64,000 bases of DNA from Gnetum montanum (taxonomy: Eukaryota > Plantae > Gnetophyta), in NCBI GenBank assembly GCA_015680685.1, contig MNCI01002560.1, forward strand, positions 100,354-164,353, read 5' to 3'. The notes beneath the pieces were generated by a model. That model had not been told where the DNA came from. It searched no databases and was given only the letters and a program-made list of their open reading frames with translations. Position numbers and translations under genes: made by a program. Below, piece by piece: positions 33,585 through 64,000 of the stretch; position 1 is the stretch's first letter; every line of letters starts with the position of its first letter.

Positions 33585-34530
33585 AAGCTAGTTTTAGGTC
33601 TTGGAAGACCATTGGATGTGCTAATTTAAGGCCCTAGTAGATCATGATCCCAGTTTAAGGTCTGGGCAGACCATGTTGTGCTAGTTTAAGTTCCTAGTAG
33701 ACCATGATGTGCTAGTTTAAGGTTCCAACAGACCACTCTACTAGTTTAATAGCATAGAAGATGGGGGATGGCCAGTTTAAGGTCATAGTGGACCATGCTG
33801 TGGGTGCCAGTTTTGTGTCATGGCCCAAGGACATGGTGTGCTAGTTTAATGTTGTAGCAGATGATCTATGCTAGTTTAATGTCATAGTAGAAGATCTATG
33901 TCATTTTTATGTCATAGCAGTGATCTGTGCCAATTTAACATCATAGCAGATGATCTATGCAAGTTTTACATCATAACAGATGATCTGTGCCAATTTAACA
34001 TTGTAACAAATGATCTATGTCAATTTAACATCATAGAGGATGATTTGTACAAATTTTACATCATAGCAGATGATCTATGCTATTTTACCATCATAGTGGA
34101 TGATCTATGCCAGTTTTACATCATAGTGGATGATCTGTGCTAGTTTAATATCATTGCGAATGATCTATGCTAGTTTTACATCATAACAGATGATTTGTGC
34201 TAGTTTTACATCATAGAGGACGATCTGTGCTAGTTTTACATCATAGCAAATTATCTGTGCTAGTTTAATGTCATAGCAAATGATCTATGCTAGTTTTATG
34301 TCATAGTGGATGATCTATGCTAGTTTAACATCATAGTGGATGATCTGTGCCAATTTTACATCATAGTGGATGATCTATGCTAGTTTAACATTGTAGCAAA
34401 TGATCTATGCTAGTTTAACATCGTAGTGGATGATATATGCTAGTTTTACATCATACTAGATGATCTATGCTAGTTTTACGTCATAGTGGATGATCTGTCA
34501 TAGTTTAACATCGTAGCAAATGACCGTGCT
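33585..34530 (-). repeat. ~30-bp tandem array in the 3' UTR of B
   Basis: Unit GATGATCTATGCTAGTTTAACATCATAGCA, about 30 units. Left part heterogeneous, right part homogenised. Confidence 0.95.
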
Positions 34531-34574
34531 TACCCTACTTTATTATTAACATGATACTTCATGTTAAGTGTAAT

Positions 34575-36855
34575 ATGGTTTTAGGTACAGGTAGTTAACA
34601 GGATTAGTAAACTCGTTCGTCTAAGTCAGCAAGCTTGAATGCCCCATTTTCATATGCTTTTGTGACCAGAAAAGGTCCTTCCTAGTTAGCTGAGAATTTT
34701 TTCAGGTGTTCATGAATGGACTTGAAGACTAAATTCCCTTTTTTAATTGGCCATTGGTATAGATTGCAATGATGTTTGTGTCATTATTTCTCTTGATACC
34801 ACTTGATACGATTGAGTGTTTGGATGTGCTCCTTCTCCATAAAGTCAAGATCAATGGTTCTTGACTCATTGTTTTGAGCCTCATCCATAAAGCTTGAGAG
34901 GATCATTCGGAGCATCGGGACCTGCAATTCAAGAGGTAACACTACTTTAGATATGTATACTAGACTATGATATCTTACTTATGGCAGCTCTTCATGTTGT
35001 ACAATAGGCCCAAACCATGTAGACGAGTTGCTCATGTCATCATCGCTTGCTAATGCTAAGCATTTTCTTCAGAAGGTTGACAATGGCTTTATTAGTGGCT
35101 TCTGCTTGACTGTTTTCTTGAGGATAGTATAAAAATGATAAAGAGTGTTTAATACCAAGGTTTTTACAAAAGTCTTTAGTTTTTGCACTATTGAATTAGG
35201 GCCCATTATCTGTAATGATAGTCATAGCAAGGCTAAATTGAGTTACTATATTGTGCAAAATGAATTTACAAACCTATTGAGATGTGCTCTTCCTAAGGGG
35301 AATAGATTCTACCCACTTGGTGAAGTACTTAGCTATAGTAATAATGAAACTATGCCCTACAGAAGACTTGGGTGTTATGGGCCCTATGATGTCTAGTTGC
35401 CAACATTGAAAAGGCCACATGATTTTCGTGATATGTAACTCAGTAGGTGATGCATGTATCAGATTCCCATGATGTTGACATATATCACATGTCCTAACCT
35501 TAGAGAGGCAATGACACTCCATATAGGTCTAGTACTAGCCTAGGTTCCTAATTTTTGCTACCATAGCTCTGGGAGCTATGTGCCCTCCACACAGTCCCTC
35601 GTGGATGTGATCAACGATTCTTTGGGCTTCTTCGCCACTTACACAAGTTAGCAGTATCCCATCATAAGCTCTATGGCATAAATCACCATCACCTACAAGG
35701 ACATACTAGCATGCTCATTTTTGTACAGCATCTTTTTGAGTAGATGTTAAGCCTTGTGGAGGCTCAGCATGTTGGAGGTATGTTTTGACATTGTCATACC
35801 ACTCTTGAGTGTGGGTAGCACTAACAGACGCGATATTTGGTATGTGAACAATACGGTTAGTGCATTTCACTATTAAAGTGGGTAACGTAGCAAACATGTG
35901 TGGTGGCATGCATAAAGCTAACATGGCTAATGCATTGGCTATAGTGTTTTCATTGCGAGGTACATATTGAACATATAAGGTGGAAAATTGCTTTAGTAAG
36001 TACTTCACCAGATCACAGTAAGGTTGTAGGTGTTGTGCTTTATAGGCATAGATCTCTGTGACTTGGTTAATGACTAATTGTGAATCACCTCAAATTGCTA
36101 AATTCTGGATCATTAACTCTTGAGCTGCTAAAATGCCCCTAAGGAGACCCTCGTATTCTCCTATAGTATTCATGCAAAGAAATGTGAAGTGATATGAAAA
36201 AGGTTGGATCTCTTTGGAATGAAATGTGAGAATAGCTGCAGCACTACCACCTTGTGTGGTTGACTCACCATTGAAGTGTAGAACGGCTTCAAAGTCTATA
36301 GGTACTAGGCTTAGGCTACTAACATGCTCATCTGAAAATTTGGGTTCTATTATTACCTAGTCATTATTGGGTGAAGCCGTAAGTTGCATGGCTATTGCTT
36401 GACCCTTTGTAGATGACTGCGCTACATAGTGTGGGCAAATTCTATTATTATTTCTTTCCACCTGGCTATCCTACTACTTTCATATATATTGGTTGTAATG
36501 GACTTGAGTATGTTATAATGATATTGACCTGGCTATGAAACAAATAGTGTTTCCATTTTTTAAGTCCAAATACTAAGGCAAGGCAATTTTTTTGCACATC
36601 ATTATATTTGGCTTCATAGGCTATTAGTGCATGGCTCAGGTAGTAAACAAGAATCTTAGAGCCATCATCCATTTGTTGATAGAGTAAATTAGCAATGGAC
36701 ATCTCTAAAGTTGCGAGATAAATGTAAAAGGGGTTATTCTTTTATGAAGGGTAAATGATAGGAAGATGAACAAGCTCCTTTTTCAAGTTATCGAATGCTT
36801 CTTGGCATTGGTTCGTCCATTCCAAATTAGCTCTTTTTTTAAGTAAGTGTTGCAT
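34575..36855 (-). pseudogene. pol: RNase H, additional RNase H and integrase of B
   Basis: VYYLSHAL..KNCLALVF; YVPRNENTIANALA; WPFQCWQLDIIGP..YFTKWVE. Confidence 0.9.
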
Positions 36856-38300
36856 CACAGGTTATACTTGAAGTGAGTCACAAATTGGCTTAACAATTCT
36901 TCTAACGTTGAAATTGATGTGTAAGAAAGCATGCGATACCAGTCCAAAGCCTTACCAATCAATGATATGGAGAAAACATGAATGATTGCATACAACAATA
37001 GTTGTAATAATAGGGACTCGAATCTAAAATTAATGAGATGGATGTTTGGATCGCCCTCTCTATTGTATTTTGTGAATTGGAGGAGTTTTACCCCAAGAAG
37101 CAACGTAAGTGTAGGAATGACTAGGCTAACTGGATCATCCTAATAAATGTCCATAATTGTAACTATTTCAGAACTAGTGGCTTTAAGCCACTTGAATTCA
37201 TCAGTGAGGATCTGAATAAGCTAAAAGGCTTGGTCTAGACTCAGGGGTGTTACAATAGGTTGTGTAAGTTGAACTGCTGGTGGCATCACCAAAGTAGTCA
37301 TCATGGGTGGTATCATTGGTGGAACTGCAAGTCCCAGTGGAGGAGCTATTGGAGAAACTCCCACTAGTGGGGCCACTTGGGCAGCCCACAATCCTATGGG
37401 TCGTGCCACTAGAGCTACAACCATTTGTGGTGCCATGGGAATGGTCACCTGCCTCATTGCTAAAGTAGCCCATGGCCCCGTGGTTAGTTGTGCCATGTGC
37501 AAAGCTTGATACATCTAGGATTGCACATACTACAATGTCTATGATAGTTGGACAGTAGGGAACGATGTTAGTTCCCACCACGTGGTTGAGGTTGGGACTA
37601 CAGTTGGCGGTGGAATCAATGTAGAGGAAATAATGGAAGTAGGGCCCATTTTTGGTTGTGTCGTAGACATGGTATGTACATATGGTAATGTAGGCATCAT
37701 AGGTTGAGAAAACTATATAAACTACGAAGGAATACTAAAGGGAAAGAAAATTGAAGGCCCTACATGCTATTGAGTTAACAACATTTCATGACTTCCTACA
37801 ACCAAGGAAGGTTTGGGTTGTAAAAGGGTTGTCATTGTCACCAAAGGCAAAGGACTATAACTAGTATGGATATAACACATAAGTGGTCTATGAAGTTATT
37901 GGGTAAAGTGGGCCACCACTTTTAGAATGGAACTCAAATTCCTCTTGCCCATCATGAAGGGTTTCATCATAGTGAGATGCTGCATCTCACTCATTTGACC
38001 CACTCAATCGAATATGTTGATTCAATATCCATTAAAACATTTGAGTGAATGGTATAATGGCCCTATAAGTAGGAAGGAAATCCCTTCCATTCTAGTGAAT
38101 AATTTCAAAGTTATGCTTTTCTTCGTATTCCTAACGGTCTAGCAGGAGGCCCACTTGGATCCTTACACATAAGAAGTTATATAACTCTTCATCATGAGTC
38201 ATGTGTTTAGGCGATTGATGTTGCAATCGAAGAGACTGCCATGGAATCCACACTAGGCTAGGTGATTACATAGGATCCATCGCATGTTCCAAGGGATGGG
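36855..38300 (-). pseudogene. gag: gag N-terminal part of B
   Basis: LLQFTKYNREGDPNIHL..FSISLIGKALDWY..FVTHFKYN. Confidence 0.8.
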
Positions 38301-41300
38301 CTATCCCCAAGCTCAGGGTGATGACTAAGGTGCTAGGTGGGTTCATTTCTTTACTATACCAAAAAGAACGCAAGAAGTAAAGCAATAGGTAAGCTACATA
38401 GAAAGCAAGCCAAAAATAGAAAATTTTGGAAACATTGGAAAAGTAGTGGTTTACACTGCTATGCTTGCTACACTAGGTGGGACTGTCATGCTGATAGGTT
38501 TGTTATTCTACACTTGTTACACTATACATGTTATGCTACATAGAACACAGATAGTTTAATGCAATACATCATTTTTGGCTCTTTGTCCTACAGGGTTCCA
38601 AGGGAACTATCAATTGGAACCTGACTACACCAACTAAAACATAAACAACCCCTACACTAGCCTATGATCTAGCTACTGTTGTAGTAGGTCCATAGGGGTG
38701 TTACATTTTTGTTAGCAAGGAGGTACAAAAGGCACATAGGACTACTCGTGATGCATAAAAGGAACATGGAAGTTCATGCCCTCCTTCTAGTGCAAGAAAA
38801 CTATAGCATCCAAAAATGTTGGTGGCTAGAACACCAAGAGGTTATTAGGCACATAGCCTAACCCCGAGTACATGGGAGGGAAATGCTAGAGAAAACAAAA
38901 ATGGGATGCCCTGAATGATATTGTTGATCAAATAGGGACTTATGTGGTGTTAAAACAATCATGTGCGAATAATGATTTTAGAGCATCACACGTAGGAGTT
39001 GGAATAAGTGGGAATACAATACAAATAACAATGAGAGATTATCAATGTGCATATATATGGCAATAGAAAGAAATAGATATGCTAATAGTTTAAAATACTG
39101 TAGTGCAAGGAAAGAAATGCACCACCCCAAGATTTCGGGATGTGGCTTTTGATTGAATGATGTGTACAATTGGCATGCAAGATACACAAAAACAACTAGG
39201 CAGCAACGCAATATGGTCACACTCTCTAGAAGGTTGTAGATGTGGTGTTGGTAGAAACAAAGTTGACACTTGTTGGTCTAAGGGTTACTACACTATGCAT
39301 GTGTAGGTGTCATGCTCAGGTGTGGGAGTGGAACAAGGATTTGGAAGGCTCTAATGCTAATATTTGTTACTCATCCACCTTTTGTTCATCAATCTTCTTC
39401 CAAAGCTAACTGCCAAAAGCCAACCCTTAGAATGTCATTTACTGGGGTATTTATAGAGCCAGGGTTGGGGGAGAGATGTGGCTTGGACACCACTTGTCCT
39501 AGGTCCCACATAGCACAAACGTGGATGTGTTACGTTGATGTGCTACACTCAAAGTGTGGTGCTATGCTGGATAAGACAAGAATAGGAACCAAAAATCTAC
39601 CAAACTATGACCATATTACCTAGACTGCATGTGCCAAAATCTAAAGAACTACCATGTTTTTACAAGAATGTCTAGAAAAAATGCAAATCGGAGCCTATGC
39701 TCTAGGACTACATCTTCCCTCCTCTTCCAAGTAGGGTCAAGAACAGGGACAAATTTGGGGATCAATGGGGAGTGTAAGAAAATAAAGAAAACTACCGATC
39801 TTGGTTACCAGAGAGTTGCTGGAGTAGGAATGAAGGTTGATGACAAGCTCTGGGAACTTTTGGGAGGCATTCGATAAAGGTTTTCAAGTGATATGCTATC
39901 TACACTACCCAGCATAACATAGCATAAACACTTAGAAAAAATGTGTAATTTTGGCTTGTACGCTACACAACATAGCACAACAAAGCACTCATTTTTCAAT
40001 TAATTTCTTCAAAAACTAAAAACACCACTTTGAGACTCAGTAGGGCAAGCAACTTTAGCAATTGGAAACTACACTTTTCATGTTGAAAGAGCTTGATACC
40101 TTTTGGTTTCATTCTTGAGATACTTTTAACGCTGACACCTATGCTACGCTATGTAGCATAGCATCTAGTTTTGCACAAATTTTAACACAATCTGTAATTC
40201 TTTACTATGGGACCTTGATCATGCTCTAAGGACGTAGTAGGACAAGTAGCCTTGGAGGTTGAAGACCTACCAAATGCACCTTCTATGTCTAGTTCAACAC
40301 TTAGAACAATTTGCATCTTGCATGGCCTGCTACATTGTTTACGTTGTGCAACATAGCGAAGTGTAATAGGTCTGAACATAGAAAATTTTCCAAACTACTT
40401 TTTCCATCCTAAAAACTTTTAACAACTCCTAGCCTAGCATCTCGGTAGCTTGACTACTGAGACATGTGTCAAGTTAGGCAAGCTAGAGAGCATAGCAAGC
40501 TTGATGGCCCAGAAGTTAGAAAATTTTCCAAGTTGTATAGTTCACCTTTAGTGTTCCTTTTGTGCAAACTAGCCTTAAAATAGTTGCTACACTAACAATG
40601 CAAAAGAGAATAGCATATAATCCCAGAAACAACTTTGTAGGCATTAGGACTTCCAAGGTGCCATGTTTTCTGCATTGCCCCATGTGACACCAAACTCGGA
40701 GGAATTTTGTCTAGCTTCCAACGCTTGAACAAATTTGATGCTAAGTCACGAGAGCCCAAAATTGATGGTGTTTTAATGAGGGGGATCACAATGCCCACCT
40801 TGTAAATTTCCATTCTAAATGACTACTTCTACAAGCATGGTCCCATGTGATCATTTTCATCTTTGCCATGTCCCTAACTAGCAAAGCTCTTGACTAGTAC
40901 CATGCACTCCCTAAGGCTTCCATATCCACTTTGGAAGAATTTCTTAGACAATTTGTAACTTGCTTCAAGTTTAACTTGAAGCCCAAATCCACTCTAGACT
41001 AATTAATGAACATTAAGAAAGGGATGCTATAGCTAGTACAAATATTCATACAATGTTGGACTGCTTCCCTCAATGAAATTCATGGGCCAATAGCAAAAAG
41101 TTACCTTTTAGCTATCTTCAAAGGTGCAGTAAATGACTTTATCAAGTTAAAACTTTACTATTTAGCCCCACACTTTCTCAACCAAGAATTTTCTCAAATA
41201 AATAGCATACAAGATGCTACAAAGGCCAATAAGGACCTAGCCTATGTGGCCTATAAAAATGCACACATGAAAATGGACAAAGAAAAGGGGAAGATAACAA

Positions 41301-43439
41301 CAACCATTACAACTGTGGTTGACGAAGCCAAACCCAACAACACTAAACTAGCCTACACCATTAGTGACCATGGGACAAGCTCCACAAAGGCCAAAATTTT
41401 AGTGTAAGGATCGCTGAAAGTACACTCCATTGCCTATCAAGCTATTTAAGCTCTTAGACTAGTTTCTTTGTGCTAGGCGCATCCAACACAAGAAAATGTT
41501 TGAGGATACACATAAGCACCATGAGAGGTATTGAAAAGTTCTCAGAAATCCCTTTGTAGCTATGTCAAATGAGCCCTTGGTCCCTAAAAATTTTAGATTG
41601 GACCAATTTTGCAACTATCACCAGTTGCATGGCCATGACACAGACTACTGCTTGGCATTAAAAGATGACATTCAATACATGATTGATCAAGGCAAACTGA
41701 TCCTTGATGAGAGCAATACTGTGTGATCAAAAAATCAATCAATGAAATTCTACAAGGACCCCCTTAATGCTAATAGTGTAGGTTACATCATTAATGCTAT
41801 CAACATTGATGATAATTCACAACTAGCAAATGAACCATTTTTGGTTTGTGTGCCCTTTGGTGACATTGGATCATTAATGTCAACTAGACCACAACCTCCT
41901 TTTGTCATCAAATCATCACCTTAGGTGCCCACAACACCCTTTGTGGTTAGGGCCCCATAGCAGATTGTGGTGATGGCAACATAGACACCCTTTGTCATTA
42001 GGATGCAAAGACATGTGAATCCCTGATCCACTTGGGGTCCAGTGCTGGGAACTACATCACATCATAGCCATCCAAAGTCATACCCTAAAAAACTTGATGA
42101 GTGTCTAGCTAACAAAATGATTAGGGAATGGATCAAGTTAGGTCCTTCTAAGCCCATCCCCTTGTTAGCTATCCCCATGGCCTTATCATCTTAGACTACC
42201 AACACAAGCACAAACAACTAACAAACAAGCACTAAGGCTTGGAAGTTCATTGTACAAGCAAAGGTAAAATCTCCTCACCAAGAGATCCATTTCTTAGGTC
42301 ATATGAAGGAGGTGAAGGTTTCCAAAATAATGGATAGTGGAAAATATTTCTTGGACACACTGTCATAAGTTAAATAAACCCACAAACAAAAAAACACAAT
42401 GTTGAGCCTCTATGATCTAATAATGACCTCCTCTGCTCATGAGAGGTATTAGTTTTCATGTTCATATCTATTCCTATTAAGGAAGATATTCCAATAGACA
42501 AAAAATCCATTCACGCCATAATGCTTTCCCTCACAACCTAAGAATCAAGGTCAACACCCCTGAATTTTCATGATGAGGTGGTCAAGGTTGATCCTGAAAA
42601 GGGTCAGGTGACTAGTGCACCAATGTTTATAACAATTCACATAGGCCAATATAAACTTTGTAGAGTGCACATTGATTTTTGGGTGGCAATGAATGTCATC
42701 CCATTTCTTTTCATTGACAAACCTGGCCTAGTTGATTAGATCAGGCCAAAAAGGACAACATGCTTGATATCCTTCGATGGAGCACATGTTGTTGTAAAAG
42801 GAATGATCACAATAGCTTTCGTGGTAAGGGAGAAATTTTCCACTATTCTAGAGTTCATTTTTCTTGAATAAATTCCTAGATTTAACCTAATCCTGAGGAG
42901 GTCTTAGCTAGCCCAATTATGGATCGTTTCTCACCTATTCATCAAGAGATCCACTCGTCCTATAAGAGTGGAGAGGTGGTGATCTATGATGACAATGTGG
43001 CTCCCCTGACCATCAACAACATTGACATAAAATAAGGGTTGAAAGTAGAGTTCTCTAAAGACACACCACCCATTCAAGGTAAAATCCAATGTTTTCCAAC
43101 TAATCCACCTAAACAAGCAACCTCCCTAAGGGAGCTCTCTAGGAAAATTTACCTTTTGTGCAATAGTCAAAGGTCTAGGTGAATACTATATTTTGCCCTC
43201 CAAGACTTATGCACCTCCTAACCCACATCAAGTTAGAAAACACTTACATGACTAAGGCATGCCCTTAGTTTGTCTACATGTGTTGCTTACCTTTTGTTTT
43301 TCACTTGCACAATTACACTCACATTGTTATTTATATCTTGCATTAATTATTTCATTTCTTTAGTTCATGTGGTTCTATTTATCATTTTTTTTATAATATA
43401 TATATATATATATATTGTTAAAAATTAAAAGCAACAAAA

Positions 43440-43640
43440 AAGGGCATGCTAAGGCCTAAAAGTGGCAACTTGCTCCCTTCTACGCTACGGCCCAGAAAGG
43501 CCTTAAACTATCGCATGGCCTACTAAGGCCTGAAACTGGCAACTCACTTTCCTTTTCATGATGGCCCAAAATTCCCTTAACCTAGCGATGGCCCAAAATG
43601 GCCTTAAACTAGCTTCCACCATGGCCTTAAATTGGCATGG
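43440..43640 (+). repeat. Hairpin-AAACT motif array at the 5' end of the intron in A
   Basis: GGCC-N6-GGCC-TTAAACT units. Confidence 0.8.
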
Positions 43641-43859: not shown

Positions 43860-46800
43860 AGGGTTCTTCTTCCTTCTCTTCCTCTACTGCTTCACTAGGG
43901 CCTACTCCATCCCCCAAAATCTACATTAAATAAAAATAAAATAATAAATTAGCTAACAAATAAAGTGACATGTAGCATTATAATAAAGTAAATAAAAATA
44001 ATTTGAAATAGAACAACTTGAGAAGGACCTACATCCATGTTTGGGGGCATCCTATCAAGGACAACCTCCAAGTATCAGAGGATTTCATCCTTCAATAGCC
44101 ATATCCAATTCTCCTCATCAAGGTCAATACCTGCAAGGGTTTACCCTTTCTCTATAACTATCCATGAGGGCAGCCTTTATGAAAACCTAGTAGAAGTAAT
44201 TTCTCTTGAAGGTACAACGATGTTTCTCTTGGGAGTCCCACTCACCACTACATTGTTGGAAAATAGGTCATAAGCCTGTGTTGCACCAATTGCATCAAGA
44301 AATATCTCTCAGCAACGATGCTCCACAAACTCATCTTTGTACCTTTTAAGGTATGCCTCACATTCCTACTTATAATGGTGCCTATGATTCTTTTGAGTCT
44401 AGCCCCATTGATACACTTTTGCACTGTAATCCTTCTAGTTTTGATTCTTCCTTGCTAGTAGGTCCATTTGCAATCATTGTTTAATCACCTCAAAAGTGGC
44501 CTTATTATTGCCCCAAATGGCTGACCAATACCTAGCATAGGTAACTTTAGCTATGTGTTAGGAACCATTTTTTTTTTCACATGTCACCAAGAAGTCATAA
44601 TGGGACTGCAGGTCCTCCAATTTTTCATCCTAGCTTGCCCCCCCCCCCCCCCCCCCCCCTCTCCTGGAGTGTATGCACCCATTTTTATACGTTCTTGTTA
44701 ATGTGCCTACACTCTCAAAATACTCTCGTAGATGAGAGTGCACATTTACTTATCTCATCATATACATGGTGAGGCACTTGCTCCACCTCGAGGGGAAACT
44801 CAAGCATAGCATCAACTTGGGCCACCCTGTTTGGATCCCATAGAAGCTAAGAGCCTATTATCACATAATAGGGAAAGCAACGTTAGACATAAACCAAGTA
44901 GTAAATTAGTAGAGAAAAATAGATAAATAAATACATACCAATATTAGGGTCTATTTTTTGTATATGGTCCATCATGTCATCCACCAAGCCTTGCATAAAG
45001 GCAAACTTGTCAAGAGCCTCTATCCATGGGTACATATGGAAGGTGGATGTAGATGCTGGGCATTCAACAGAAACCTTGATGGCTATAACACAACACACTT
45101 AGTAATTATCAAAACATACAATAGCCAAGGGTGTAAGGTCTAAATAATAATAATAATAAATAAAGAGAAAAAAAGATGATGGTGCAACACTCCTACCAAA
45201 CAAGCCCTCAAATGTGAGAGCGGGGGGATCACTGATCTGCATGGCATTAAAGAAATTTTAAAACTCACCCCCTTCAAACTACAGTAACCCTTCTTCCTCA
45301 AGTTTTTGTAGCACTTCTATGGCTTCTCATTCCTCTTCATCTACTACTTGTTCCTCAATTTGAGGAGGGACATCATCCTCTATGGGCTCTGCTACCGTGG
45401 TAGGGATCTTGTTGCCTATAGCACATTAGTTAGGATTAGAATTTACAATAATTAGTATAGTAGATCATGGAACATTATAGTAGTATCCAATAATTCATAC
45501 TTACTTGCAATTCCTAAGCAAACATTGCAAAGCTTAAACTGAATCATTCTACCACTCTCCTCCACTTCATGCATGGGCTCCTCCATTGGGCGTGGTTTCT
45601 TAATCTTTGTTTTGGACAATCCCACTACCTTAACAATGATTTGTGCCCCTCTCACTACATTTCCAATGTTCACTGATGGGGCCTCACTTGCACTATCACA
45701 TGTGTGGAAGATCATCTCACATTACCTTTGGTTATAATAGAAAATGACTTGCTGATGGCCTCTAAAGAATCTTGTGACTACATGGTGTTGAACGGGTGTT
45801 GGATCTATGGCCTGGAAATTTGCCTACAATCTTGGATCACCCACTGCCCTTTCTTACAAACCACCAAAAACTCTACAAACCTTCATAGGCATGCTATGAA
45901 GAAGGTGAAGTGCATGTGCAATCTCGCTTGGATGTTGTGGCACAACCTAACAATTTCAGCACATAGTCTGCCGACAAGGTAAGAGGCCCAATTGTACTAT
46001 GTCCCCTCCTCTATTGCATCCTTCATCATCCAAGATTGTTTCACCCCAATAATATTTCATTAGGAGAGAAAATTTGGGAACATGCATGCATGAAAGATTG
46101 GATAGAGGTGGTGGACCATGGGGAACCTCACTTCTTTGACTTGAATTCCTTTACGAGACTTAGATGCACCTAGCCACTCCTCAATGTCCCCTTTTTGGTC
46201 TAAGTCTTTTTCAATATTTTTGATAATTGTTGGGACCTCAGAAGGGATTCTAAAGAGGTCTACAAAAAATTCATCTGTAATGTCAAAGGTCACCCACACA
46301 CCTAAAAGAGTCATGAAGCAATCAGTTCTCTTACTAAAATAGTCAATAATGGCAATCATCTCAGCCACTGGGATACTTGGGCTAATGGCCAAAAAAAGGT
46401 CCATTATTCCAACCTATTGGAGCTTCCTGGTTATCTCCACTAGAGCCTCATAGCACAACCAATGCTATGAACAATTTACCTCACTATATTTCATGATGAG
46501 GATGGCCTCAATATGGCCTATTACAACCACCATGACCTCTCCTAACTTAACCATTACTACAATAGGTAAAAGTAAAGTTAGTAACATGAGAAAAGCTGAG
46601 TAAAAAGTGCATAAGAAATCAATGATACATTACTCATGTGGCACAAATGGTATAAAAGATGGTGGTGGTGGGGCTAAAACCTCCTCCATGCTTGATATGC
46701 TAATCACCCACTCAAGATCCAACCAACCAAGAGCTAGACACCTCTCATAAGACCTAGAATATCAATGAGGGAGCTCTACTAGGTCTACCCCAATCTACTC

Positions 46801-48640
46801 AATCATCACTATGCAAAAATTTTCAAAAGATGATCATTCTTGTAGGGCAATGAGAGTCAAGTTCAATGCCCCAACCTCATTGTGAAGGCCATTTGGATCA
46901 ATAGTGAATCTAGCAATAGATGTAAGTGGTAAGAATCTTAACATGAGTCATAATCAAATGGATACAATGAAAAATTGTAAAAGGGCTCACCCTCTAGCAC
47001 AATAAACTATCCAAGGTGGGTTCTAGAAAATGGTATGTATGCATCAGGCAATGAACAATGTGTTGTTCTTATTGTAGCACTAAAATTCTAGCATCTGCCA
47101 GATCGTAGACAAAAGTCTAAGGGCCCTATGGCCTTGACCTAAACTTCCTACTCTTTCATCACCAGAAAGCTCATCAAATATGAACCTTAGGATGCCTCAA
47201 TTCATCCCAAGCAACATTGTTTCCATTATGACATTGGCTACTTCTGCTACCAAGTGTGACCATATCATCACACTAAAGTGACAGAGTAGAAACTCCAAGA
47301 ACCTTTATGCTCCTGACTAGAACCATACCACCTAGTGATCCACAGGTCTATCTAGGGAAAGTATGTTTGGCATAGGCTCACTTATGCAACACAAGATACC
47401 CACCAATTCAACCATAACAAGGATGGATTTCAATAATACTTTGTAGCTATAGTAGTAACAAGAGGAGAATGTTAGCATTGGATACAAAAAATAAAAAAAT
47501 GCATAAAAATTAGACTTAATATATTAGTAAAAATCTTAACTTTTCCACCAAGCCCCATGGGAAAGGGACTTTAGCATACTCATCTAACATGCCTAGTCCC
47601 TAATGGGGCATAGCACTAATATCTATGTTTCACGTTCATGAATGTTACAGCTTTGAAAACATCAAAAAAATTGTTAACTATCAATTACGCTCCCCATAGG
47701 GCATAACTCAAAAATTTTCAAAATCTTCTAAGTGTTGGCTACACTCCCTACAAAGCATAACCTTCAAAAAACTATAAAAGCACTATTTGTAGAGCGTAAC
47801 AACTACAAAACTTTCTAAAATAGCAAAAAATTTCCAATTGTTGGTTACACTCACTATAAAGTGTAACCTTCAAAACTACAAAAAATTTCTAATTGTTGAC
47901 TATGCTACGTATAGAGCATAATGCTAGAAAATTTTTAATTGTTCTATTACACTCTCAAGAGCATACCTTGGTGAGATAGTCGTGACACTCACACTCACCC
48001 TATCTAGACTGTTACACTCTGTGTTCACACAAAACATTCTAGCTCTATCCCATGTCATGTGTGGAATGTCAAAAACCCTTGTTCTACATCACATGAAATA
48101 CACTAAAAATCCTTATTCTACATCATGCATTGTATGCTAAAAACCCTTGTTCCATTTCACACACAATATGCCAAAAACCCTTGTTCTACATCACACATGG
48201 TATGCCGAAAACCCTCCCAACAAAAAAAAACCCTTGCAACAAAGAAATAATAAACCCACAAGAATCCACCACATGCACTTCCTCTCCTAGTTGTGACTCA
48301 TGGCAACCACAGTGGTGGTGCTGGTCCCTACCCAAGGCAAGCCATCCTCAAAATCCCAAAACCCTAAAGTGAATAGGAAGAAAGGAAAGAAATCACAAGG
48401 AAATATTGTACGCCTTACCTTACTAATGGCATTTCCCTCTAGTCCTGTATGCATGACCTAGGAAGTCACTTCAGTGCATGTTCTCCTTTGTCCACATTGG
48501 TGAGCTTGGGATGTTGATATTCACTATGGTGCATCATGGTTGAATGGTTATGTTGTTATTTTCTTCTTCCTCTTTGCTACACTCTAGCTTCCTCTCTTTC
48601 GTTGCTACACTCTGACTCCCTTTACCTTGGTTGTGATATG
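43860..48640 (-). pseudogene. Antisense multi-exon accessory gene of A: NIF/FCP1-like pseudophosphatase plus PMD-like region
   Basis: Exons ~48419-48640, 46991-47446 (LVMVELVGIL..RFLEFLLCHFSVMIWS..KNNTLFI..NPP), 46634-46909 and ~45450-46556 (FDITDEFFVDLFRIP..YNWASYL), with further exons to ~43860. GT-AG boundaries. Homologous to 62197-64000. Confidence 0.75.
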
Positions 48641-49148
48641 CTCAGTGACTATTTGTTTCAACTTTAAAAATGACAAGTTGACTATGGTAAAAATTTTATT
48701 TATACTCTTCTAGGGTGAAGGGCATGTCACCCTCCTAGGTACTATCCTATGTCCCACACATAACACGGGACTATTCCTTGTCCTGCACTTAACACAAGAC
48801 GAACGTAGCACCTAGAGTTAGAAAATTTTTTCAAATTTTTTCCAGCATTCCATACATAGAAAATTTTTGCATTCTTTTTGATTACCCAATAAATGTGTAG
48901 CCTAGTCCCATATTTAAAACTTTCCAAGCCTTGCCTAAATTTATGCATCCTATGCAAACCATGGTCTGTTACAACCTTAAACTGCAAACCGTAGGGCTAA
49001 TCAAAGCACTAAAATGAATTTGCATACTTGTTTATCTAATCCCACAACTACATAATTAGGAAAATTTTCATAGCTTTTTCTTACTTATTTTATGCATTTC
49101 ACCTTATTAAGATAGGTGACACTTGACATATTTTTGGTTGTTTTATAG

Positions 49149-52629: not shown

Positions 52630-52669
52630 TACGCAATGCCATGCCAATGACAAAGTAAGGTAAGAGAAC

Positions 52670-52960
52670 ACCCACTACAATATTAAACTAGCATAGAACA
52701 TCTACTATGACATTAAACTAGCATAGAACATCTGCTATGATGTTAAACTAGCATAGAATGTTCTTGGGCTATGAAATTAAATTGGAACCCATATCATGGT
52801 CTGCCATGACCTTAAACTAACCATCCACTATCCATTATGTTGATAAACTAGCACAAAGGTCTACTAGGACCTTAAACTAGCACATCACAATTTGCCAAGG
52901 CTTTAGACTAGGTTAACGATTTAGTAGGACCTTAAACTAGCATAACATGTAGTCTACCAA
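52670..52960 (+). repeat. Hairpin-AAACT array in the 3' UTR of A
   Basis: Units such as GGTC-N6-GACC-TTAAACTAG and CATC-N6-GATG-TTAAACTAG, about 9 copies. Confidence 0.85.
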
Positions 52961-54639: not shown

Positions 54640-55254
54640 TAATCATCACTTGGCCATCTTCAAGGATACAGTTAATGACTTTATCAAGTCAAAATTGTAC
54701 TACTTAGACTCACAATCCCTAAGCTAGTCCTTTGCCCAAACATAGAGCATACAGGATTTGGCAGAAGCTAGGAAAGACCTGGCCTATGTGGCCTATAAGA
54801 ACTTACATGCCAAGAAGGACAAAGACAAGGGAAAGCAAACCACAACCATGGCAACTATGGCCAATGAGGCTAAAACAACTAATCCAAAGCCAACGCCTAG
54901 GCCACCCAAGGCCCTGATCAAAAACAAAATTTCCAACACTAGTGCAGCAAATAACCAACCTACATCATCAGTGACCATGGTGTAGGTGACTCTAAGACCT
55001 AACTTTAAGTGCAAGGATCACTTAAGGTATACCTCGTTGCCTCTTAAACCTTCAAAACTACTAAAGGTTGGATGCATCTAGTATAAGTAGATGTTTGAGG
55101 ACACTACCAAAAGAAATGATAGATACTACAAGCTTTGAAGGAATCCTACATCAACAACCCAAAATGAGCCACTAGTATCAAAAAACTTTAGGTTGGATAG
55201 GTTTTGTCACTATTACCAACTTTTTGGGCACAAAGTTGAGTTTTTCATAGCCTT
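54640..55254 (+). pseudogene. gag: Second gag fragment joined to the truncated 3' LTR of A
   Basis: Homologous to 41100-41660 (KDLAYVAYKN..KDKGK; FCHYYQLFGH). Confidence 0.8.
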
Positions 55255-55269
55255 GGTTTTAGGCAGAGG

Positions 55270-58004: not shown

Positions 58005-61000
58005 ACGTAAAACGGCTTTAGGTACAAGTGATTGGTTGGATTGGAAAGCTCGTTTCCTTCCACGTCAGCTAGCTTGAATGCTCCATTGTCAAATGCTTTA
58101 GTGACCAAGTAAGGCCCTTCCCAGTTAGCTAAGAATTTGTCCGAGTGTTCCCGAACAGCTTTAAGCACAAGGTCACCTTCTTTGATAGGGCACTTGTTGA
58201 TGTTATGTCGATGTCATTGCCATTGTTGTTTTTGGTACCATTCGATTTGGTCGAGTGCGCGTATGCGTTCCTCTTCCACCGAGTCCAGGTCGATGATACA
58301 CAGATCATTATTCTGCCCGTCATTGAGAAGTCCAAAGAGTGTGATCCTTAAAGATGGTACCTGTAATTCCAAAGGTAAAACAGCTTCTGAACCGTAACCT
58401 AGACTATATGGTATTTTACTTGTTGACGTTCAGTGCGTAGTACGGTATGCCCACAATGCGTACACCAATTGTTCGTGCCACTTCCTCTTGCTTTGGGTAA
58501 GCATTTTCTTAAGTATTGTAATAATCGTCTTGTTTGTTGCTTCCGCTTGTCCATTGCTTTGAGGATAGTAAGGGGATGAAAACGAATGTTTGATCCCTAG
58601 GCTTTTGTAAAAGGTTTGGGTTTTGGCATTGCTAAATTGTGGCCCGTTATCAGTGATGATTGTTATGGGAATGCCAAAACGGGTTACAATGTTTTCGAGG
58701 ATGAAATTGCATACATGTTTAGATGTAGTTTTGCGAAGGGGAGCAACTTCTACCCACTTCGTAAAATATTTGGTTGCGGTTATGATGAAACTATGCCCTA
58801 CAAAAGATGAGGGTGTTATCGGGCTGATAAGGTCCAATCCCCACTTTTGAAAGGGCCATGTGATTTGTGTTGTATGCAACTCATTTGGCGGGACATGTAT
58901 TAGATTACTATGTTTTTGGCAAGTGCTACATGTTTTAACCTTGGAGAAACATTCATACTCCATGTGCGTCCAATAGTAGCCTAAGCGTCTGATTTTCGTT
59001 GCCATGGCTTTTGGCGCTATGTGTCCTCGACATAGTCCCTCACGTACCTGATCAACAATAGTTCAGGCATCGGTACTACTAATGCACGTTAGCAATATGC
59101 CTTCGTAGGATCGACGACACAATGTGTCCCCTACCAGGGTATACTACTTAGAACATTTGCGCACTGCGTCTTTCTATGCATTTGTTAGATGTCGTGGTGT
59201 TTCACCATGTAGAAGGTATTCTTTTATGTTGTCATACCATTCTACCGCATGTGTTGTACTAACAGATGCAATTGGCAACGTATCGGGAGTATCGATTATC
59301 GGTTTGGCACAATTGACTATGGAGCTTGGTAGTGCGTGAAACATGTCTGGCGATATGTTTAATGCTAATGTGGCTAACGCGTCTGCAATGGTGTTATCAT
59401 TTCTAGAAACGTGTTGCACATTGATGTTTTCAAATCGCCTCATTAGGTGTTTTGCCAAGTCATAGTATGATTGTAAGTGTTGGGCTTTGCATGTATAGAC
59501 GTCTGTGACCTGGTTTAGGACTAGTTGCGAGTCTCCCCTGACTACAAGCCATGTGATGTCTGAAGCTAGTGCTGCCACAAGGCCTCTAAGGAGACCTTCA
59601 TACTCCGCTATGTTGTTCGTACAGTGAAAGTCGAAATGATAAGCAAAGGGTTGGATCTCCCCAGAGGGATAGGTGATGACAGCAGCTGCACTTCCTCCTC
59701 GAGAGGTGGATGCTCTGTCAAAGTTTAGGATGGCATCGTAGTCATTGGGCACTGTGTCTATGGCGCTTATACTCTCATCCGGGAACTCTGGCTCTATAGT
59801 CGCTTGATCGCGTGTTGGTGATGTGGCCATTTGGTTTGCTATGGCTTGACCCTTGACTGATGATTGTGCTACGTAGTACAGGTCAAACTCGGCTATCATG
59901 GCTTTCCACCGGGCTATTCGACTTGTTTCATAAGTGTTCCCTGTTATGGCTCTTAATACATTGTCCTTGCAAATTATGTACACCTGGTTATAGAAGAGGT
60001 AATGTCGCCATTTTCTTAAGGAAAAGACCAAAGCTAAACATGACTTCTCTACATCGTTGTACCTTTTCTCGTGGGCAACTAATGCATGGCTCAAGTAATA
60101 TACAGGGACTTCAGTTCCGTCATCTTATTTCTGGCAAAGCATAGACGCGATTGACGATTCCGAAGTGGCGAGGTAAATGTAAAACGGTTTATCGTTTTTG
60201 GGCAGGTAAACCATAGGTAGTCGGGCAAGTGCTGTTTTGATGTTCTCGAATGCTTCTTAGCACTACAGAGTCCATTCAAAATAGACGTTTTTGTGTAATA
60301 GGTGGTTCATAGGTTTTAGTTTGTCCGTCAGTTTTTCTATGAAGCACCTGATAAAGTGCAATCTACCTTGTAGACCTCGAAGTTCGGTAAGGTTGCCTGG
60401 TAGTTTTAGGTTTGTTATGGCCTTAACATTATCGGGGTCCACCCGTATTCCTGCTTCTGAGGCTATAAATCTGAGCATTTTTCCTGTTTTGATGCCGAAG
60501 ACACATTTTTTTGGATTAAGTCTTAGTTCATACTTCAAACAACGTTTCAATACTAAGTTGAGATCTTGTACATGTTGTTCTTCAGTTTTTGATTTAACTA
60601 CAATGTCATCCACATAATCGTTGAGCGATCGTAGCATGTAATCACTAAAGATAAATGTCATCGCTTTTTGATACGTAGCTCCTACGTTCTTGAGACCAAA
60701 GGACATCATTGTATAGCAAAAGGTTCCCCATGGTGTCATAAAGGTTGTCCTAATTGATGTTCCAGGTTGATACGTATTTGATTGTATCCTGAGAAGCCAT
60801 CCATAAAAGACAATAAGGCATGCCCAGCAGTTGATTCAACAAGTTGATCGATGCTGGGTAGAGGAAAATCATCTTTTATGGTTGCAACATTTAGATCTCG
60901 GAAGTCAATGCATAAGCGAATGCTTCCATTTTTCTTTGGGATAATGACCATGTTGGACACCCACTCGGCGTAACCAATAGTCCGAATGAAACTGGCTTGA

Positions 61001-61500
61001 TAAAGCTTGGTGATCTCATTGCAAACTGCCAATGCCACCTCGGGTCTAACCTTTCATGCCTTTTATTTTACTGGTCTCAATTTTGGGTCAAGAATGATGT
61101 TGTGTTGGACAATTCTAGGGTCTAACCCGGGCATGTCCGTATAGGACCAAGTGAAGGCTTTCATATTTTCCCTAAGCACATTCTTGATGTCTTTGGCCAA
61201 GTGCGGTTGTAATAGCATGCTTAATTTTAATACTTTAATTTCCCCATCAGGCATGGTAATGGGGGTTTCCACCAATGGGTCTTCGGTGATATTTTCGGCT
61301 TCTATGTCTAGGAATTTTGTCATGCCTTCGTAATCGTCTGTTGTTTGCTGTGTTGAGGATATGACTACGTCGTCTGTTGGTGAACTCAAGTTGATGAGAT
61401 TTATGTTAATGTCTCGTGCAATTTTGTCATACAGTCCGTCAATGATTAACGGTGCGGTTAAATGCTGGCAGTCCATTGAGCTTGCTCCTGCCAATAAACA
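58005..61500 (-). pseudogene. pol: pol of D: RT, RNase H, additional RNase H, integrase (few frameshifts)
   Basis: AFTWSYTDMPG, LCIDFRDLN, FMDGFSGYNQI, YVDD, LNFD..CTNNIAEYEGL, WGLDLI..TDNGPQF..SNGQAEATNK. Confidence 0.97.
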
Positions 61501-61597
61501 GAGAGCTGAATAAGAGAAAGGGGAAATGTTCTATGCCTTTTGGTAATTTTAAACTATGTGTACATGCATAATAGTGGATTATCATCACACCGGGACA

Positions 61598-61740
61598 TAC
61601 GGCAGTTTAAGGCCTTACCGGGCCACAAGTGGCAGTTTAAGGCCATACCGGGTTGTAAGTAGCAGTTTAGGGCCATACCGGGCTGTCACTGGGTTGGGAA
61701 ATGGCAGTTTAAGGCTGTACCAGGCCTTAAGTGGCTTTAC
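61598..61740 (-). repeat. Hairpin-AAACT array upstream of RT in D
   Basis: Four units of ~30 bp, minus-strand GGCC-CGGTAW-GGCC-TTAAACTGCC. Confidence 0.85.
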
Positions 61741-61924: not shown

Positions 61925-61936
61925 CACTATATAAAG
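61925..61936 (+). promoter_or_regulatory. TATA box of the antisense accessory gene
   Basis: CACTATATAAAG about 270 bp upstream of ATG 62197. Confidence 0.5.
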
Positions 61937-62196: not shown

Positions 62197-64000
62197 ATGG
62201 GCAAAGGAAAAGAAGTGGAAGGCCAGGGGAGGAAGGGTCCCAACTTGACCTTTGCGGAGGAGACTAAAGCCATGTTGCAGGGCCTACCTATGCCAAGGAT
62301 CTCTTCATGGCCTGTGACATCCCATAGGTAGGCTCTGATCCTTGCCTCTGTTATTATTTTTTTGCTTTCCTTTTTCAGCGTAGACAGTCTCGGCGTATAC
62401 GCTGAGCGTAGGGGGTTTTCAGCATAAGGGGTTTTCGGCGTATACACCAAGCATGACTTCATAGCGTAGGCTATTGGGTTAGCATAGATTGTCAGGGCAT
62501 AATCAGACTTATCAGCGTAAGCAATTTTCCTGCACTATTATGTTAGCGTAAGCCACGGCATCATGAGTTCTCTATGCACGAAATTGTCAGCGTGATTTGT
62601 TTGTTTTATCAGCGTAGATTTTGTTTACTGTGACGGCGTATACGCCGAGGGTTTTTTTAGTGTATACGCTGTGCGTGCATAGTTGTTTTTACGGCATAGA
62701 CTTGCTTTTCATGTTTCTGGCATAAACTTGTTTGTTGCCGGCGTAGACTGTTTACGCTGAAAGCGAACTTGGGTGTATACGCTAAGGGTTTCTTCGGCGT
62801 ATATGCTAAGCATAAAATAGTTCATTGTCGGCGTATACGCTGAGTTAAGCAGCGTGTTACGCTAAGCGTAACAGTTTTGCCAGCGTATACACTGGTTTAC
62901 GCGGCGTATACGCTGAGTGTGAACAGTTAGTAAAATTTTTAGATTTTAAGTGCCGATTCATGATGTGAACTTTTGCTTTTCGGGCTGTTTTGAAGCATGG
63001 CTAATTAATGGTGGCGTCGTGATTGGTTACAGGGACAGTAAGCGCTTCCTCCTTGTTGTTGAGCTTGTTGGGATCTTAACATGGGTTGACCCCATTGAGG
63101 CTGGGGAGACTCCCCCGGATCTAACCGTGGATGATGACGAGGTTTGGTTCAGGGAAGGCGCATGTGAATTTCTGGCCTTCCTATTAGACAATTTCGAGGT
63201 GGCTATCTGGTCGAACTTTAGCGAGGTGATCGCACGGAGCGTGCTTGAGGCAATGCTTCCGGGAGCTGCAGAGGGTGTCATGGTCTTCATAGAAGACATT
63301 GACAAGGGGCCATTTGTTAACAAGGATGGTTCTACTCGTGGGCCCAGGTCAAAAAGCCCATTAACGTGTGTGTGGGCACTATTGCCATAACGGTTAGACT
63401 ACCTCAACAACACTCTGTTCATAGCTACCCACGCGCACACATTGTTCCAGAATCCTCCTGGCACAGTGTACCGAGTGGATAGGTAGGACTCTTTAAGTTT
63501 ATTGTTTCCTTCTGCCGTTTTGTGTTTGTTTCTTGTTTTGACATTTAGTTGTTTATAGACCGAAGACCAACCCGGACGGGACATGCATTGAGGATGAAGG
63601 ACTAGCTCTTGCTCGCACTTCCTTGGAGGCATTCATGACGGGCCCCACCCTTCGTGGAATTGTACTGGGTCAAACGAAGGGAGCGATCGTCCATTTTCAC
63701 AAGCAGTTCTCCAGAGTGTTCGCGATGTGCAAAGCTCGTGGGTGGCTTCATGAAGACTGGTCGGACAATGGGCCAATCTTTCCTCGTGACTTTGGCAGCA
63801 CATCTAAATCCGCCACTAACGGTAAATGATAACATTTCCTAGATATGTTAGTGAGTTGGTCCAACTGTTTGGATTTACGCTGATATGACCATTTTAAATT
63901 GCTTTTACAGTTGATGTACCTTCTGGTGGGGATCCGGTGACAACTGGATGAACTGAGACTACCTTGTCGAAGAAGTTCGGGGAGGTGACTAAGGCCCAAA
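62197..64000 (+). CDS. Antisense spliced accessory gene of D: NIF/FCP1-like (HAD) pseudophosphatase; continues beyond the window; two point stops
   Basis: Exons 62197-62327, 63033-63482, 63559-63821 and 63911-end splice in frame at GT-AG. Motifs KRFLLVVELVGIL..VWFREGACEFLAFLLDNFEVAIWS..LNNTLFI..QNPPGT. Stops TAA at 63388 and TGA at ~63949 look like C->T changes. Confidence 0.8.

What the first reader, a model, noticed from the sequence alone, without database searches (positions are those of the whole stretch)
62197..64000. Retrotransposon-encoded spliced antisense gene for an FCP1/NIF-type pseudophosphatase, upstream of RT
Seen: four exons splice in frame on the strand opposite pol, with their own TATA box. 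Exon 2 follows the NIF/FCP1 phosphatase pattern (LLVLDLDGTL..RPG..EFL..FEVAIWS..NTLLIDD..NP). Both catalytic motifs are lost: DLDGT reads ELVGI and IDD reads IAT. The strongly diverged copy in element A has the same VELVGIL and NNTLFIA, and its first two introns are at the same positions and in the same phase. This suggests the dead active site is a conserved lineage feature rather than decay. Known: FCP1/SCP/CPL enzymes act on the RNA polymerase II CTD and need DxDxT. Inference: a TE-borne decoy or phospho-reader that could influence transcription or silencing of the element.
Basis: partly seen in the sequence, partly recalled or inferred. Interest (0 to 1): 0.92.

Follow-up and report, generated by a model that had tools for sequence, protein, structure and literature searches.

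The report
Dead-phosphatase accessory gene in a retrotransposon
A plant Ogre/Tat-type retrotransposon carries, on the strand opposite its own genes and in the gap between protease and reverse transcriptase, an intron-bearing extra gene whose first domain is a phosphatase fold that lost its catalytic residues long ago; the copy at this locus is itself broken by stop codons.

Summary
Exon 2 is a real NIF-type HAD domain: hhalign E 1.2e-12 against a 23-member NIF subfamily, and the fold is closest to SCP/CTDNEP1. Motif I reads ELVG and motif IV reads AT, both in this copy (B) and in the diverged copy A. The loss of catalysis therefore predates their split.

Three points need correcting:
1. Neither copy is intact. 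B has in-frame stops at 63388-63390 (exon 2) and 63949-63951 (exon 4). A has 7 stops in exon 2 alone.
2. The nearest relatives are not FCP1/SCP/CPL. They are an uncharacterised 'LDLNG' NIF subfamily, auto-named TIM50-like, so the link to the Pol II CTD is unsupported.
3. Pfam NIF alone is marginal (21.5 bits against a 21.8 cut-off).

The gene lies antisense between gag-protease and RT of an element with RT-RNH-aRNH-INT order, inside what looks like an Ogre-style sense-strand intron of about 6 kb in A. The extra ORFs I found described for Tat elements sit 5' of gag or 3' of pol, are unspliced, and carry PMD or Tr28.

First-reader notes report the same gene on at least 8 other pieces of this genome; I could not check them. 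RNA evidence could not be obtained, and the function remains inferred.

The parts
61928..61935 (+). TATA-like box (TATATAAA) about 260 nt upstream of the ATG of the antisense gene. Copy A has GTATAAATA at about 48705-48697 on the minus strand, in the equivalent place.
   Evidence: Read directly from the sequence. Promoter activity was not tested.
62197..62327 (+). Exon 1: ATG plus 43 codons and 2 nt, with a GT donor at 62328.
   Evidence: No Pfam match. Only weak similarity to copy A's exon 1.
62328..63032 (+). Intron 1 (705 nt, phase 2), full of short CGTA-rich repeats.
   Evidence: Not alignable to intron 1 of copy A.
63033..63482 (+). Exon 2: NIF-type HAD domain without catalytic residues. 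Motif I is ELVGI (63061-63075) and motif IV is IAT (63421-63429). It is broken by an in-frame TAA at 63388-63390.
   Evidence: Pfam NIF 21.5 bits. hhalign E 1.2e-12 and a collinear E 2e-3 for the second piece. AlphaFold2 pLDDT 77. Foldseek and VIA-align top hits are SCP1, SCP3 and CTDNEP1, Z 7.3-6.7.
63559..63821 (+). Exon 3 (open, 87 codons). It is homologous to copy A's exon 3 (DPNG.., GWL..W motifs) but has no match to any family.
63911..63984 (+). Exon 4 (74 nt), with an in-frame TGA at 63949-63951 and a GT donor at 63985. The gene runs off the window after this.
   Evidence: Aligned by eye to copy A's exon 4 as translated.
58016..61494 (-). pol of element B in the order RT, gRNH, aRNH, INT. 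It is split into five ORFs by stops or frameshifts.
   Evidence: Pfam RVT_1, RT_RNaseH, RVT_3 and rve. Homology to copy A's pol.
61488..61507 (-). Candidate 3' splice site of a sense-strand (Ogre-like) intron just upstream of the RT frame. A polypyrimidine tract is followed by AG at 61507-61506, with a second AG at 61489-61488.
   Evidence: Copy A has TTGTTTTATAG at 49137-49147 in the equivalent place. Splicing is inferred, not shown.
43860..48712 (-). Copy A of the same antisense gene. Exon 2 is 47446-46991 and further exons run down to about 43860. It is heavily decayed, with 7 stops in exon 2.
40778..43079 (+). gag (40778 to about 41700, CCHC-like knuckle near 41610) and protease (about 42500-42950) of element A. 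A candidate donor CAAG|GTAAAA lies at about 43079. The antisense gene lies between this point and RT (acceptor at about 49147).
   Evidence: Translations, tblastx gag matches, splice-like sites.

Best explanation
This is an accessory gene of an Ogre/Tat-lineage Ty3/gypsy retrotransposon family of a plant genome.

Position: it sits on the strand opposite gag-pol, in the roughly 6-kb gap between gag-protease and RT. By analogy with Ogre, that gap is probably an intron of the element's own transcript. Because the gene is antisense, its introns are not removed from the genomic RNA and are copied at each retrotransposition.

Structure: it has its own TATA-type promoter and at least four exons inside the window. 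More exons are visible in copy A.

Origin: its first domain descends from a host NIF-family HAD gene of the 'LDLNG' subgroup. Before elements A and B diverged, the nucleophile Asp became Glu, the next motif-I residue became Val, and the Mg-binding DD became AT. After that the domain was kept under purifying selection as a non-catalytic fold.

Likely action (inferred): a binding module, as in the NIF-fold pseudo-phosphatase TIM50, working with the C-terminal part of the protein as a regulator of the element or of host silencing.

At this locus the gene, like the rest of element B, is a dead copy with two in-frame stops.
For: - NIF homology.
- Fold.
- Shared dead motifs, with 43% amino-acid identity over 138 codons between A and B, pN 0.43 against pS 0.83. 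For pol, pN is 0.26 and pS 0.78.
- Same place and orientation in two elements whose pol genes are about 65% identical in DNA.
- Introns are unalignable while exons are conserved.
- Element type RT-gRNH-aRNH-INT: with the lineage definitions in PMC6317226.
- gag-PR lies upstream of the gene in A, and splice-like sites bracket the gap.
- No inverted repeats flank the gene in A.
- At least 8 first-reader notes report the same gene on other pieces of this genome. These are unchecked leads only.
Against: - Both copies in the window are pseudogenes, so no intact frame was seen.
- Only two copies could be compared. Synonymous sites are saturated, so dN/dS cannot be computed, and aligning on protein biases pN downwards.
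- Pfam NIF is just below its cut-off.
- The structure model covers only 118 residues and used NIF proteins as its alignment.
- No relative of the transposon-borne gene was found in 1.84 billion protein representatives, so its spread beyond this genome is unknown.
Confidence: 0.72

Rival explanations
1. Non-functional passenger. A host NIF-family gene fragment was captured once by an ancestral element and has been carried along without ever serving the element. The dead motifs simply reflect that it was never needed.
For: Both copies are broken. All catalytic motifs are gone. Exon 3 is only 19% identical between copies. There is no expression evidence.
Against: Exon 2 keeps 43% identity and the fold-defining hydrophobic pattern, while synonymous sites are saturated and introns are unalignable. 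Intron phases, splice sites and a TATA box are kept in both copies. Its conservation equals that of the pre-RT part of pol.
Confidence: 0.15
2. The product that matters is the antisense RNA, not the protein. Transcription from the internal TATA promoter yields RNA complementary to the element's genomic RNA. This would feed or modulate small-RNA silencing, and the coding capacity would be secondary.
For: Antisense transcripts of plant LTR retrotransposons have been proposed to act this way (PMC7264820). A TATA-like box is conserved in both copies.
Against: The pattern pN < pS in the antisense frame and the conserved splice phases point to constraint at the protein level. This reading is not exclusive with the best explanation.
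Confidence: 0.07
3. An independent host gene or a nested different transposon that merely lies next to the pol fragment at this locus.
For: The window ends at 64000, so gag-PR of element B and the 3' end of the gene are not visible there.
Against: The same gene lies in the same orientation and distance from RT in element A. There gag-PR is seen on the other side. No flanking inverted repeats were found.
Confidence: 0.03

Closest known systems
Extra ORFs (eORF/aORF) of plant Tat-lineage Ty3/gypsy elements: PMD-coiled-coil ORF1 of Ogre, antisense PMD or Transposase_28 ORFs of Retand, Grande and RIRE2 (PMC4408406, PMC6317226, PMC7264820, PMC11963269)
   Same: An accessory gene of unknown role carried by most copies of a Tat-lineage element. 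It can be antisense with its own promoter, and it is thought to be regulatory.
   Different: The described ones lie 5' of gag or between pol and the 3' LTR. They were found as unspliced ORFs (at least 250 codons in the Neumann et al. survey, PMC6317226) and carry PMD or Tr28. This one lies between protease and RT, has several introns, and begins with a NIF-type HAD domain.
Ogre gag-pro / RT-RH-INT intron (Neumann et al. 2003 and Steinbauerova et al. 2008, as cited in PMC6317226)
   Same: gag-protease is separated from RT-RNH-INT by a non-coding gap with splice-like ends. The domain order is RT-gRNH-aRNH-INT.
   Different: The Ogre gap averages 274 bp. Here it is about 6 kb and holds a whole gene on the other strand. 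Splicing was not shown here.
NIF/FCP1-like HAD phosphatases (Pfam PF03031), specifically the uncharacterised 'LDLNG' subgroup found here (P0001-P0024, including tomato, Spirodela and Riccia proteins auto-named TIM50-like)
   Same: Collinear sequence blocks (LLVLDLNG, RP..EFL.F....F.V.VWSS, FVWDQ, L..VW, NTLLIDD...K...NPPNT) and an SCP-like fold.
   Different: The motif I nucleophile Asp is Glu, the next conserved residue is Val, DD is AT, WSSA is WSNF, and the motif III Lys is out of register. The gene is carried by a transposon.
TIM50, a NIF-fold protein without phosphatase residues that acts as a presequence receptor (PDB 3QLE and 4QQF appear among the fold matches)
   Same: A NIF fold kept without catalytic residues. 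This is a precedent for a binding role.
   Different: There is no specific sequence relationship. TIM50 ranks below SCP/CTDNEP1 in the fold search. TIM50 is a host mitochondrial protein.
PMD plus PP7/PP7L phosphatase module of Arabidopsis (MAIN/MAIL1-PP7L, MAIL3; PMC7156037)
   Same: A transposon-related domain paired with a phosphatase-like partner and acting in TE silencing. First-reader notes say this gene continues into a PMD-like region.
   Different: PP7 is a PPP-family metallophosphatase, which is unrelated to HAD/NIF. The PMD part was not confirmed here.

Membership tests
NIF / FCP1-like HAD phosphatase family (PF03031) | Sequence match to the family model at or above the curated cut-off | tested here: inconclusive
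   Pfam gives 21.5 bits against a cut-off of 21.8, E 2e-4, covering only profile positions 35-76. Against a 23-member NIF subfamily profile the match is strong: probability 97.8, E 1.2e-12, 112 columns. All members of that profile pass PF03031.
NIF / FCP1-like HAD phosphatase family (PF03031) | HAD Rossmann-like core with the SCP/FCP-type insertion | tested here: met
   The AlphaFold2 model of residues 1-118 of exon 2 has pLDDT 77. The 12 best structures are SCP1/2/3 and CTDNEP1, Z 7.3-6.7 with about 103 residues aligned, then a step down to Z 5.9 for other HADs. Foldseek gives probability 0.99-1.00 and E 9e-3. Caveat: this is a partial domain, and the input alignment consisted of NIF proteins.
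NIF / FCP1-like HAD phosphatase family (PF03031) | Motif I DxDx(T/V) with the nucleophilic Asp | tested here: not met
   It reads ELVGI at 63061-63075, and copy A reads the same. The aligned family column is D-L-N-G, conserved in at least 90% of members.
NIF / FCP1-like HAD phosphatase family (PF03031) | Motif IV acidic pair (DD) that binds Mg2+ | tested here: not met
   It reads IAT at 63421-63429, and copy A reads 'IA' followed by a stop. DD is invariant in the 23 relatives.
NIF / FCP1-like HAD phosphatase family (PF03031) | Phosphatase activity on phospho-Ser/Thr substrates such as the Pol II CTD | not testable with these tools
   No assay was possible. From the motif losses, activity is not expected (inference from established HAD enzymology).
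Ogre/Retand-type Tat lineage of Ty3/gypsy retrotransposons | An aRNH domain between gRNH and INT | tested here: met
   Element B shows RVT_1, then RT_RNaseH and RVT_3 in one ORF, then rve. The criterion comes from PMC6317226.
Ogre/Retand-type Tat lineage of Ty3/gypsy retrotransposons | Protease encoded with gag and separated from RT-RNH-INT (in Ogre, by a spliced intron) | tested here: inconclusive
   In A, gag and protease lie at 40778 to about 42950 and RT starts after about 49148. GT and AG sites sit at the ends of the gap. Splicing itself could not be tested.
Described antisense extra ORFs of plant LTR retrotransposons (aORF-3R) | Located between pol and the 3' LTR | tested here: not met
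   The gene lies between protease and RT in A and directly upstream of RT in B.
Plant mobile domain (PF10536) proteins | Match to the PMD model in the C-terminal part of the gene | tested here: inconclusive
   Only the decayed copy A covers that part. Seven of its stop-free pieces (54-117 aa) gave no Pfam match at E up to 10. The Atlas gave only weak leads (score 0.87) to Transposase_32 and ATHILA ORF-1.

The most novel reading that the evidence does not exclude
A lineage of Ogre-like retrotransposons has turned a host NIF-type phosphatase into a catalytically dead accessory protein. The protein is expressed from an internal antisense promoter inside the element's own intron and spliced like a host gene. 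It binds a phosphorylated host or element target, for example part of the transcription or silencing machinery, to favour the element. This would be a retrovirus-style accessory gene in a plant retrotransposon, with a recognisable fold.
Probability: 0.2. Interest if true: 0.8.

Novelty: new variant of a known kind. Interest (0 to 1): 0.55.

Why it matters
Extra genes of plant retrotransposons are common, but almost none has a recognisable fold or a testable function. Published surveys look only for long unspliced ORFs outside the gag-pol region (at least 250 codons in PMC6317226).

A multi-exon antisense gene hidden in the protease-RT gap would be missed by such surveys. This one has a fold with well-understood chemistry and a clear ancestral loss of catalysis. 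That gives a concrete handle on what accessory proteins do for a plant retroelement: test whether it binds phosphopeptides, and to what.

It also shows how antisense orientation lets a retroelement carry introns. The caveat is that the two copies seen here are dead, and nothing about expression or function could be tested.

Tried and rejected
I did not try another route.
- phmmer of exon 2 against PDB sequences found nothing.
- HMMER of exon 2 against 1.84 billion representatives gave only four weak hits, E 2e-4 to 8e-4. All are host-type NIF proteins, and none is a transposon-borne relative.
- Exons 1 and 3 had no Pfam match, and exon 3 had no match to the NIF subfamily profile.
- PMD in copy A's downstream exons was not confirmed.
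- dN/dS could not be computed because synonymous sites are saturated (pS 0.78-0.83). Only pN against pS is reported.
- Organism: the RNH-aRNH ORF finds only 34-40% identical proteins, from angiosperm TEs and metagenomes. The source species stays unknown.
- Inverted repeats around the gene in A: none is convincing.
- The pair 41108/54650 that I first took for LTRs of A turned out to be gag against gag of another fragment.
No full-length model was searched or folded.

Full report
WHAT IS THERE

The last 1.8 kb of the window holds, on the plus strand, the 5' part of a multi-exon gene.
- TATATAAA lies at 61928-61935 and the ATG at 62197.
- Exon 1 is 62197-62327, exon 2 is 63033-63482, exon 3 is 63559-63821 and exon 4 is 63911-63984.
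- Every intron is GT..AG with a pyrimidine-rich 3' end, and the frames join across the junctions.
- Immediately to the left, on the minus strand, lies the pol of a Ty3/gypsy element (element B, 58016-61494). Pfam gives RVT_1, RT_RNaseH plus RVT_3 (the extra 'archaeal' RNase H), and rve, in that order.
- In the classification of Neumann et al. 2019, an aRNH between gRNH and INT marks the Ogre/Retand branch of the Tat lineage (PMC6317226).

THE COPIES ARE BROKEN

- A TGA at 63949-63951 sits in exon 4.
- B's pol is also split into five ORFs.
- A second copy of the gene (element A, minus strand, exon 2 = 47446-46991) was found by tblastn. It has seven stops in exon 2 alone and many more downstream.

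So 'splice in frame' is correct as to phase, but no open frame exists at either locus.

IS EXON 2 A NIF/FCP1-TYPE DOMAIN?

Yes, but the evidence needed more than Pfam.
- Pfam NIF scores 21.5 bits (cut-off 21.8, E 2e-4) over 42 residues only.
- phmmer against PDB sequences finds nothing.
- HMMER against 1.84 billion representatives finds four proteins at E 2e-4 to 8e-4. All four are clear PF03031 members.
- One of them served as a seed to collect 21 relatives, including proteins of tomato, Solanum pennellii, Spirodela and Riccia. UniRef auto-names these TIM50-like.
- Against the profile of 23 such proteins, the first 118 residues of exon 2 score probability 97.8, E 1.2e-12 over 112 columns. The 30 residues after the stop align to the very next block, NTLLIDD...NPPNT (E 2e-3).
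- An AlphaFold2 model of the 118-residue piece, with these relatives as the alignment, has mean pLDDT 77.
- Its 13 best Foldseek matches are CTDNEP1, SCP1 and SCP3, at probability 0.92-1.00 and best E 9e-3.
- VIA-align gives Z 7.3-6.7 with about 103 residues aligned for these, then a step down to Z 5.9 for other HAD enzymes.

Caveats: the piece is a partial domain, the Z values are middling, and the input alignment consisted of NIF proteins.

THE ACTIVE SITE

In the 23 relatives, motif I is D-L-N-G (at least 90% conserved) and the motif IV pair DD is invariant.
- B reads E-L-V-G and A-T.
- A reads E-L-V-G and A followed by a stop.
- WSSA has become WSNF in B, and the invariant lysine before L..VW is out of register.
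- The two copies share the heptamers VELVGIL and NNTLFIA although they are only 43% identical overall. The substitutions therefore predate their split.
- The closest relatives already carry Asn, not Asp, at the second motif-I position, and they are not FCP1, SCP or CPL proteins. Nothing here ties the domain to the Pol II CTD.

IS IT PART OF THE RETROTRANSPOSON, AND WHERE?

A and B are distinct families; their pol genes are about 65% identical in DNA. In both, the gene lies antisense directly upstream of RT.

Element A shows the other side of the gene.
- gag runs from 40778 to about 41700, with a C..H....C knuckle.
- Protease lies at about 42500-42950.
- Both are on the plus strand, upstream of the gene.

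So the order is gag-PR, then about 6 kb holding the antisense gene, then RT-gRNH-aRNH-INT.

The ends of this gap carry a good donor in A (CAAG|GTAAAA at about 43079). Pyrimidine-rich acceptors lie just before the RT frame in both elements (A: AG at 49146-49147; B: AG at 61507-61506). This is the Ogre arrangement, in which the gag-pro and RT-RH-INT frames are separated by an intron spliced from part of the transcripts (PMC6317226, PMC4408406). In Ogre the gap averages 274 bp and holds no gene. Splicing here is inferred only.

No inverted repeats flank the gene in A, so there is no sign of a nested DNA transposon.

A third element (C, 30034-40773, with 2-kb LTRs about 81% identical) is inserted into A's gag. 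It is itself an internal-deletion derivative lacking the gene.

WAS THE DEAD DOMAIN KEPT BY SELECTION?

Between A and B, with codons holding stops left out, the figures are as follows.

| Region | Amino-acid identity | pN | pS |
|---|---|---|---|
| Exon 2 (138 codons) | 43% | 0.43 | 0.83 |
| Exon 3 | 19% | 0.52 | 0.78 |
| Least conserved pol stretch (before RT) | not reported | 0.36 | not reported |
| pol overall | not reported | 0.26 | 0.78 |

- The introns are not alignable at all.
- Synonymous sites are saturated, so no dN/dS can be given. Aligning on protein also biases pN downward.
- Still, a 138-codon, nearly gap-free alignment at 43% identity across saturated synonymous divergence points to purifying selection on the protein in the past, after catalysis was lost. 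Conserved intron phases and a TATA-like box in both copies point the same way.

COMPARISON WITH WHAT IS KNOWN

Extra ORFs are a hallmark of Tat elements.
- Ogre has a PMD-coiled-coil ORF 5' of gag in sense.
- Gymnosperm TatIII and TatV have an antisense PMD ORF 3' of pol.
- Retand, Grande and RIRE2 have an antisense Transposase_28 ORF 3' of pol (PMC4408406, PMC6317226, PMC7264820, PMC11963269).

I found no report of an extra gene between protease and RT, of a multi-exon one, or of a NIF/HAD domain. The systematic survey of Neumann et al. required unspliced ORFs of at least 250 codons lying outside the polyprotein region, which would miss this gene.

Within this scan, first-reader notes describe the same antisense NIF gene, often called 8-exon and PMD-fused, on at least eight other pieces of this genome. 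These are unchecked notes, but they agree with a family-wide feature.

The PMD-like continuation could be looked at only in the decayed copy A and was not confirmed.

HOW IT MOST LIKELY WORKS

Shown:
- An antisense, intron-bearing gene carried by two diverged Tat-type elements.
- A NIF fold.
- Ancestral loss of catalytic residues.
- Past constraint on the protein.
- Both present copies dead.

Inferred:
- It is transcribed from its own promoter.
- Its introns survive retrotransposition because the genomic RNA is the opposite strand.
- It lies in an intron of the sense transcript.
- The dead HAD fold serves as a binding module, as TIM50's does, within a larger accessory protein that helps or regulates the element.

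The specific 'CTD decoy' idea has no support beyond fold family.

LIMITS

- The source organism is unknown; the best pol relatives are only 34-40% identical.
- Only two copies could be compared.

Noticed in passing
window 30034-40773 (LTRs 30034-32054 and 38822-40773): A third related element (C, minus strand) with 2-kb LTRs about 81% identical is inserted into the gag of element A. Internally, a gag N-terminal piece (about 36858-37058) is joined directly to RNH-INT, so it is a deletion derivative lacking protease, the antisense gene and RT.
   Followed up: partly
window 33587-34530 and 52665-52895: Arrays of a 30-nt tandem repeat sit in the spacer between INT and the 3' LTR of elements C and A. 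Such arrays are typical of Tat/Retand elements.
   Followed up: no
window 61590-61720, 48975-48995 and 43440-43640: Short GGCC..AAACTGCC units recur on both sides of the antisense gene, between it and RT and near its 3' end in A. They resemble the units of the 30-nt arrays. Their role is unknown; they might mark the ends of the gene's transcription unit.
   Followed up: no
window 62330-62930 and 47560-48260 (minus strand): Intron 1 of the antisense gene is filled with short repeats in both copies, but with different units: CGTA-rich 'GGCGTATACGCTGAG / CAGCGTAGAC' units in B, and repeats of about 50 nt, 'GGGTTTTTGGCATA..GATGTAGAACAA', in A.
   Followed up: no
window 54650-55255: A gag fragment 55-62% identical in protein to A's gag follows directly after A's internal 3' region, where A's 3' LTR is expected. 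This points to a rearranged or recombined junction.
   Followed up: partly
window 9069-10316 (minus strand): A 414-codon open frame with an RVT_1 domain (E 3e-25) lies in a GC-rich stretch (54% GC, against about 38% around it).
   Followed up: no
proteins P0001-P0024 (host NIF 'LDLNG' subfamily): The host relatives form a NIF subfamily spread over plants and protists. Motif I is DLNG instead of DxDxT, with Asn at the general acid/base position, while DD is kept. They appear uncharacterised and are auto-named TIM50-like.
   Followed up: partly
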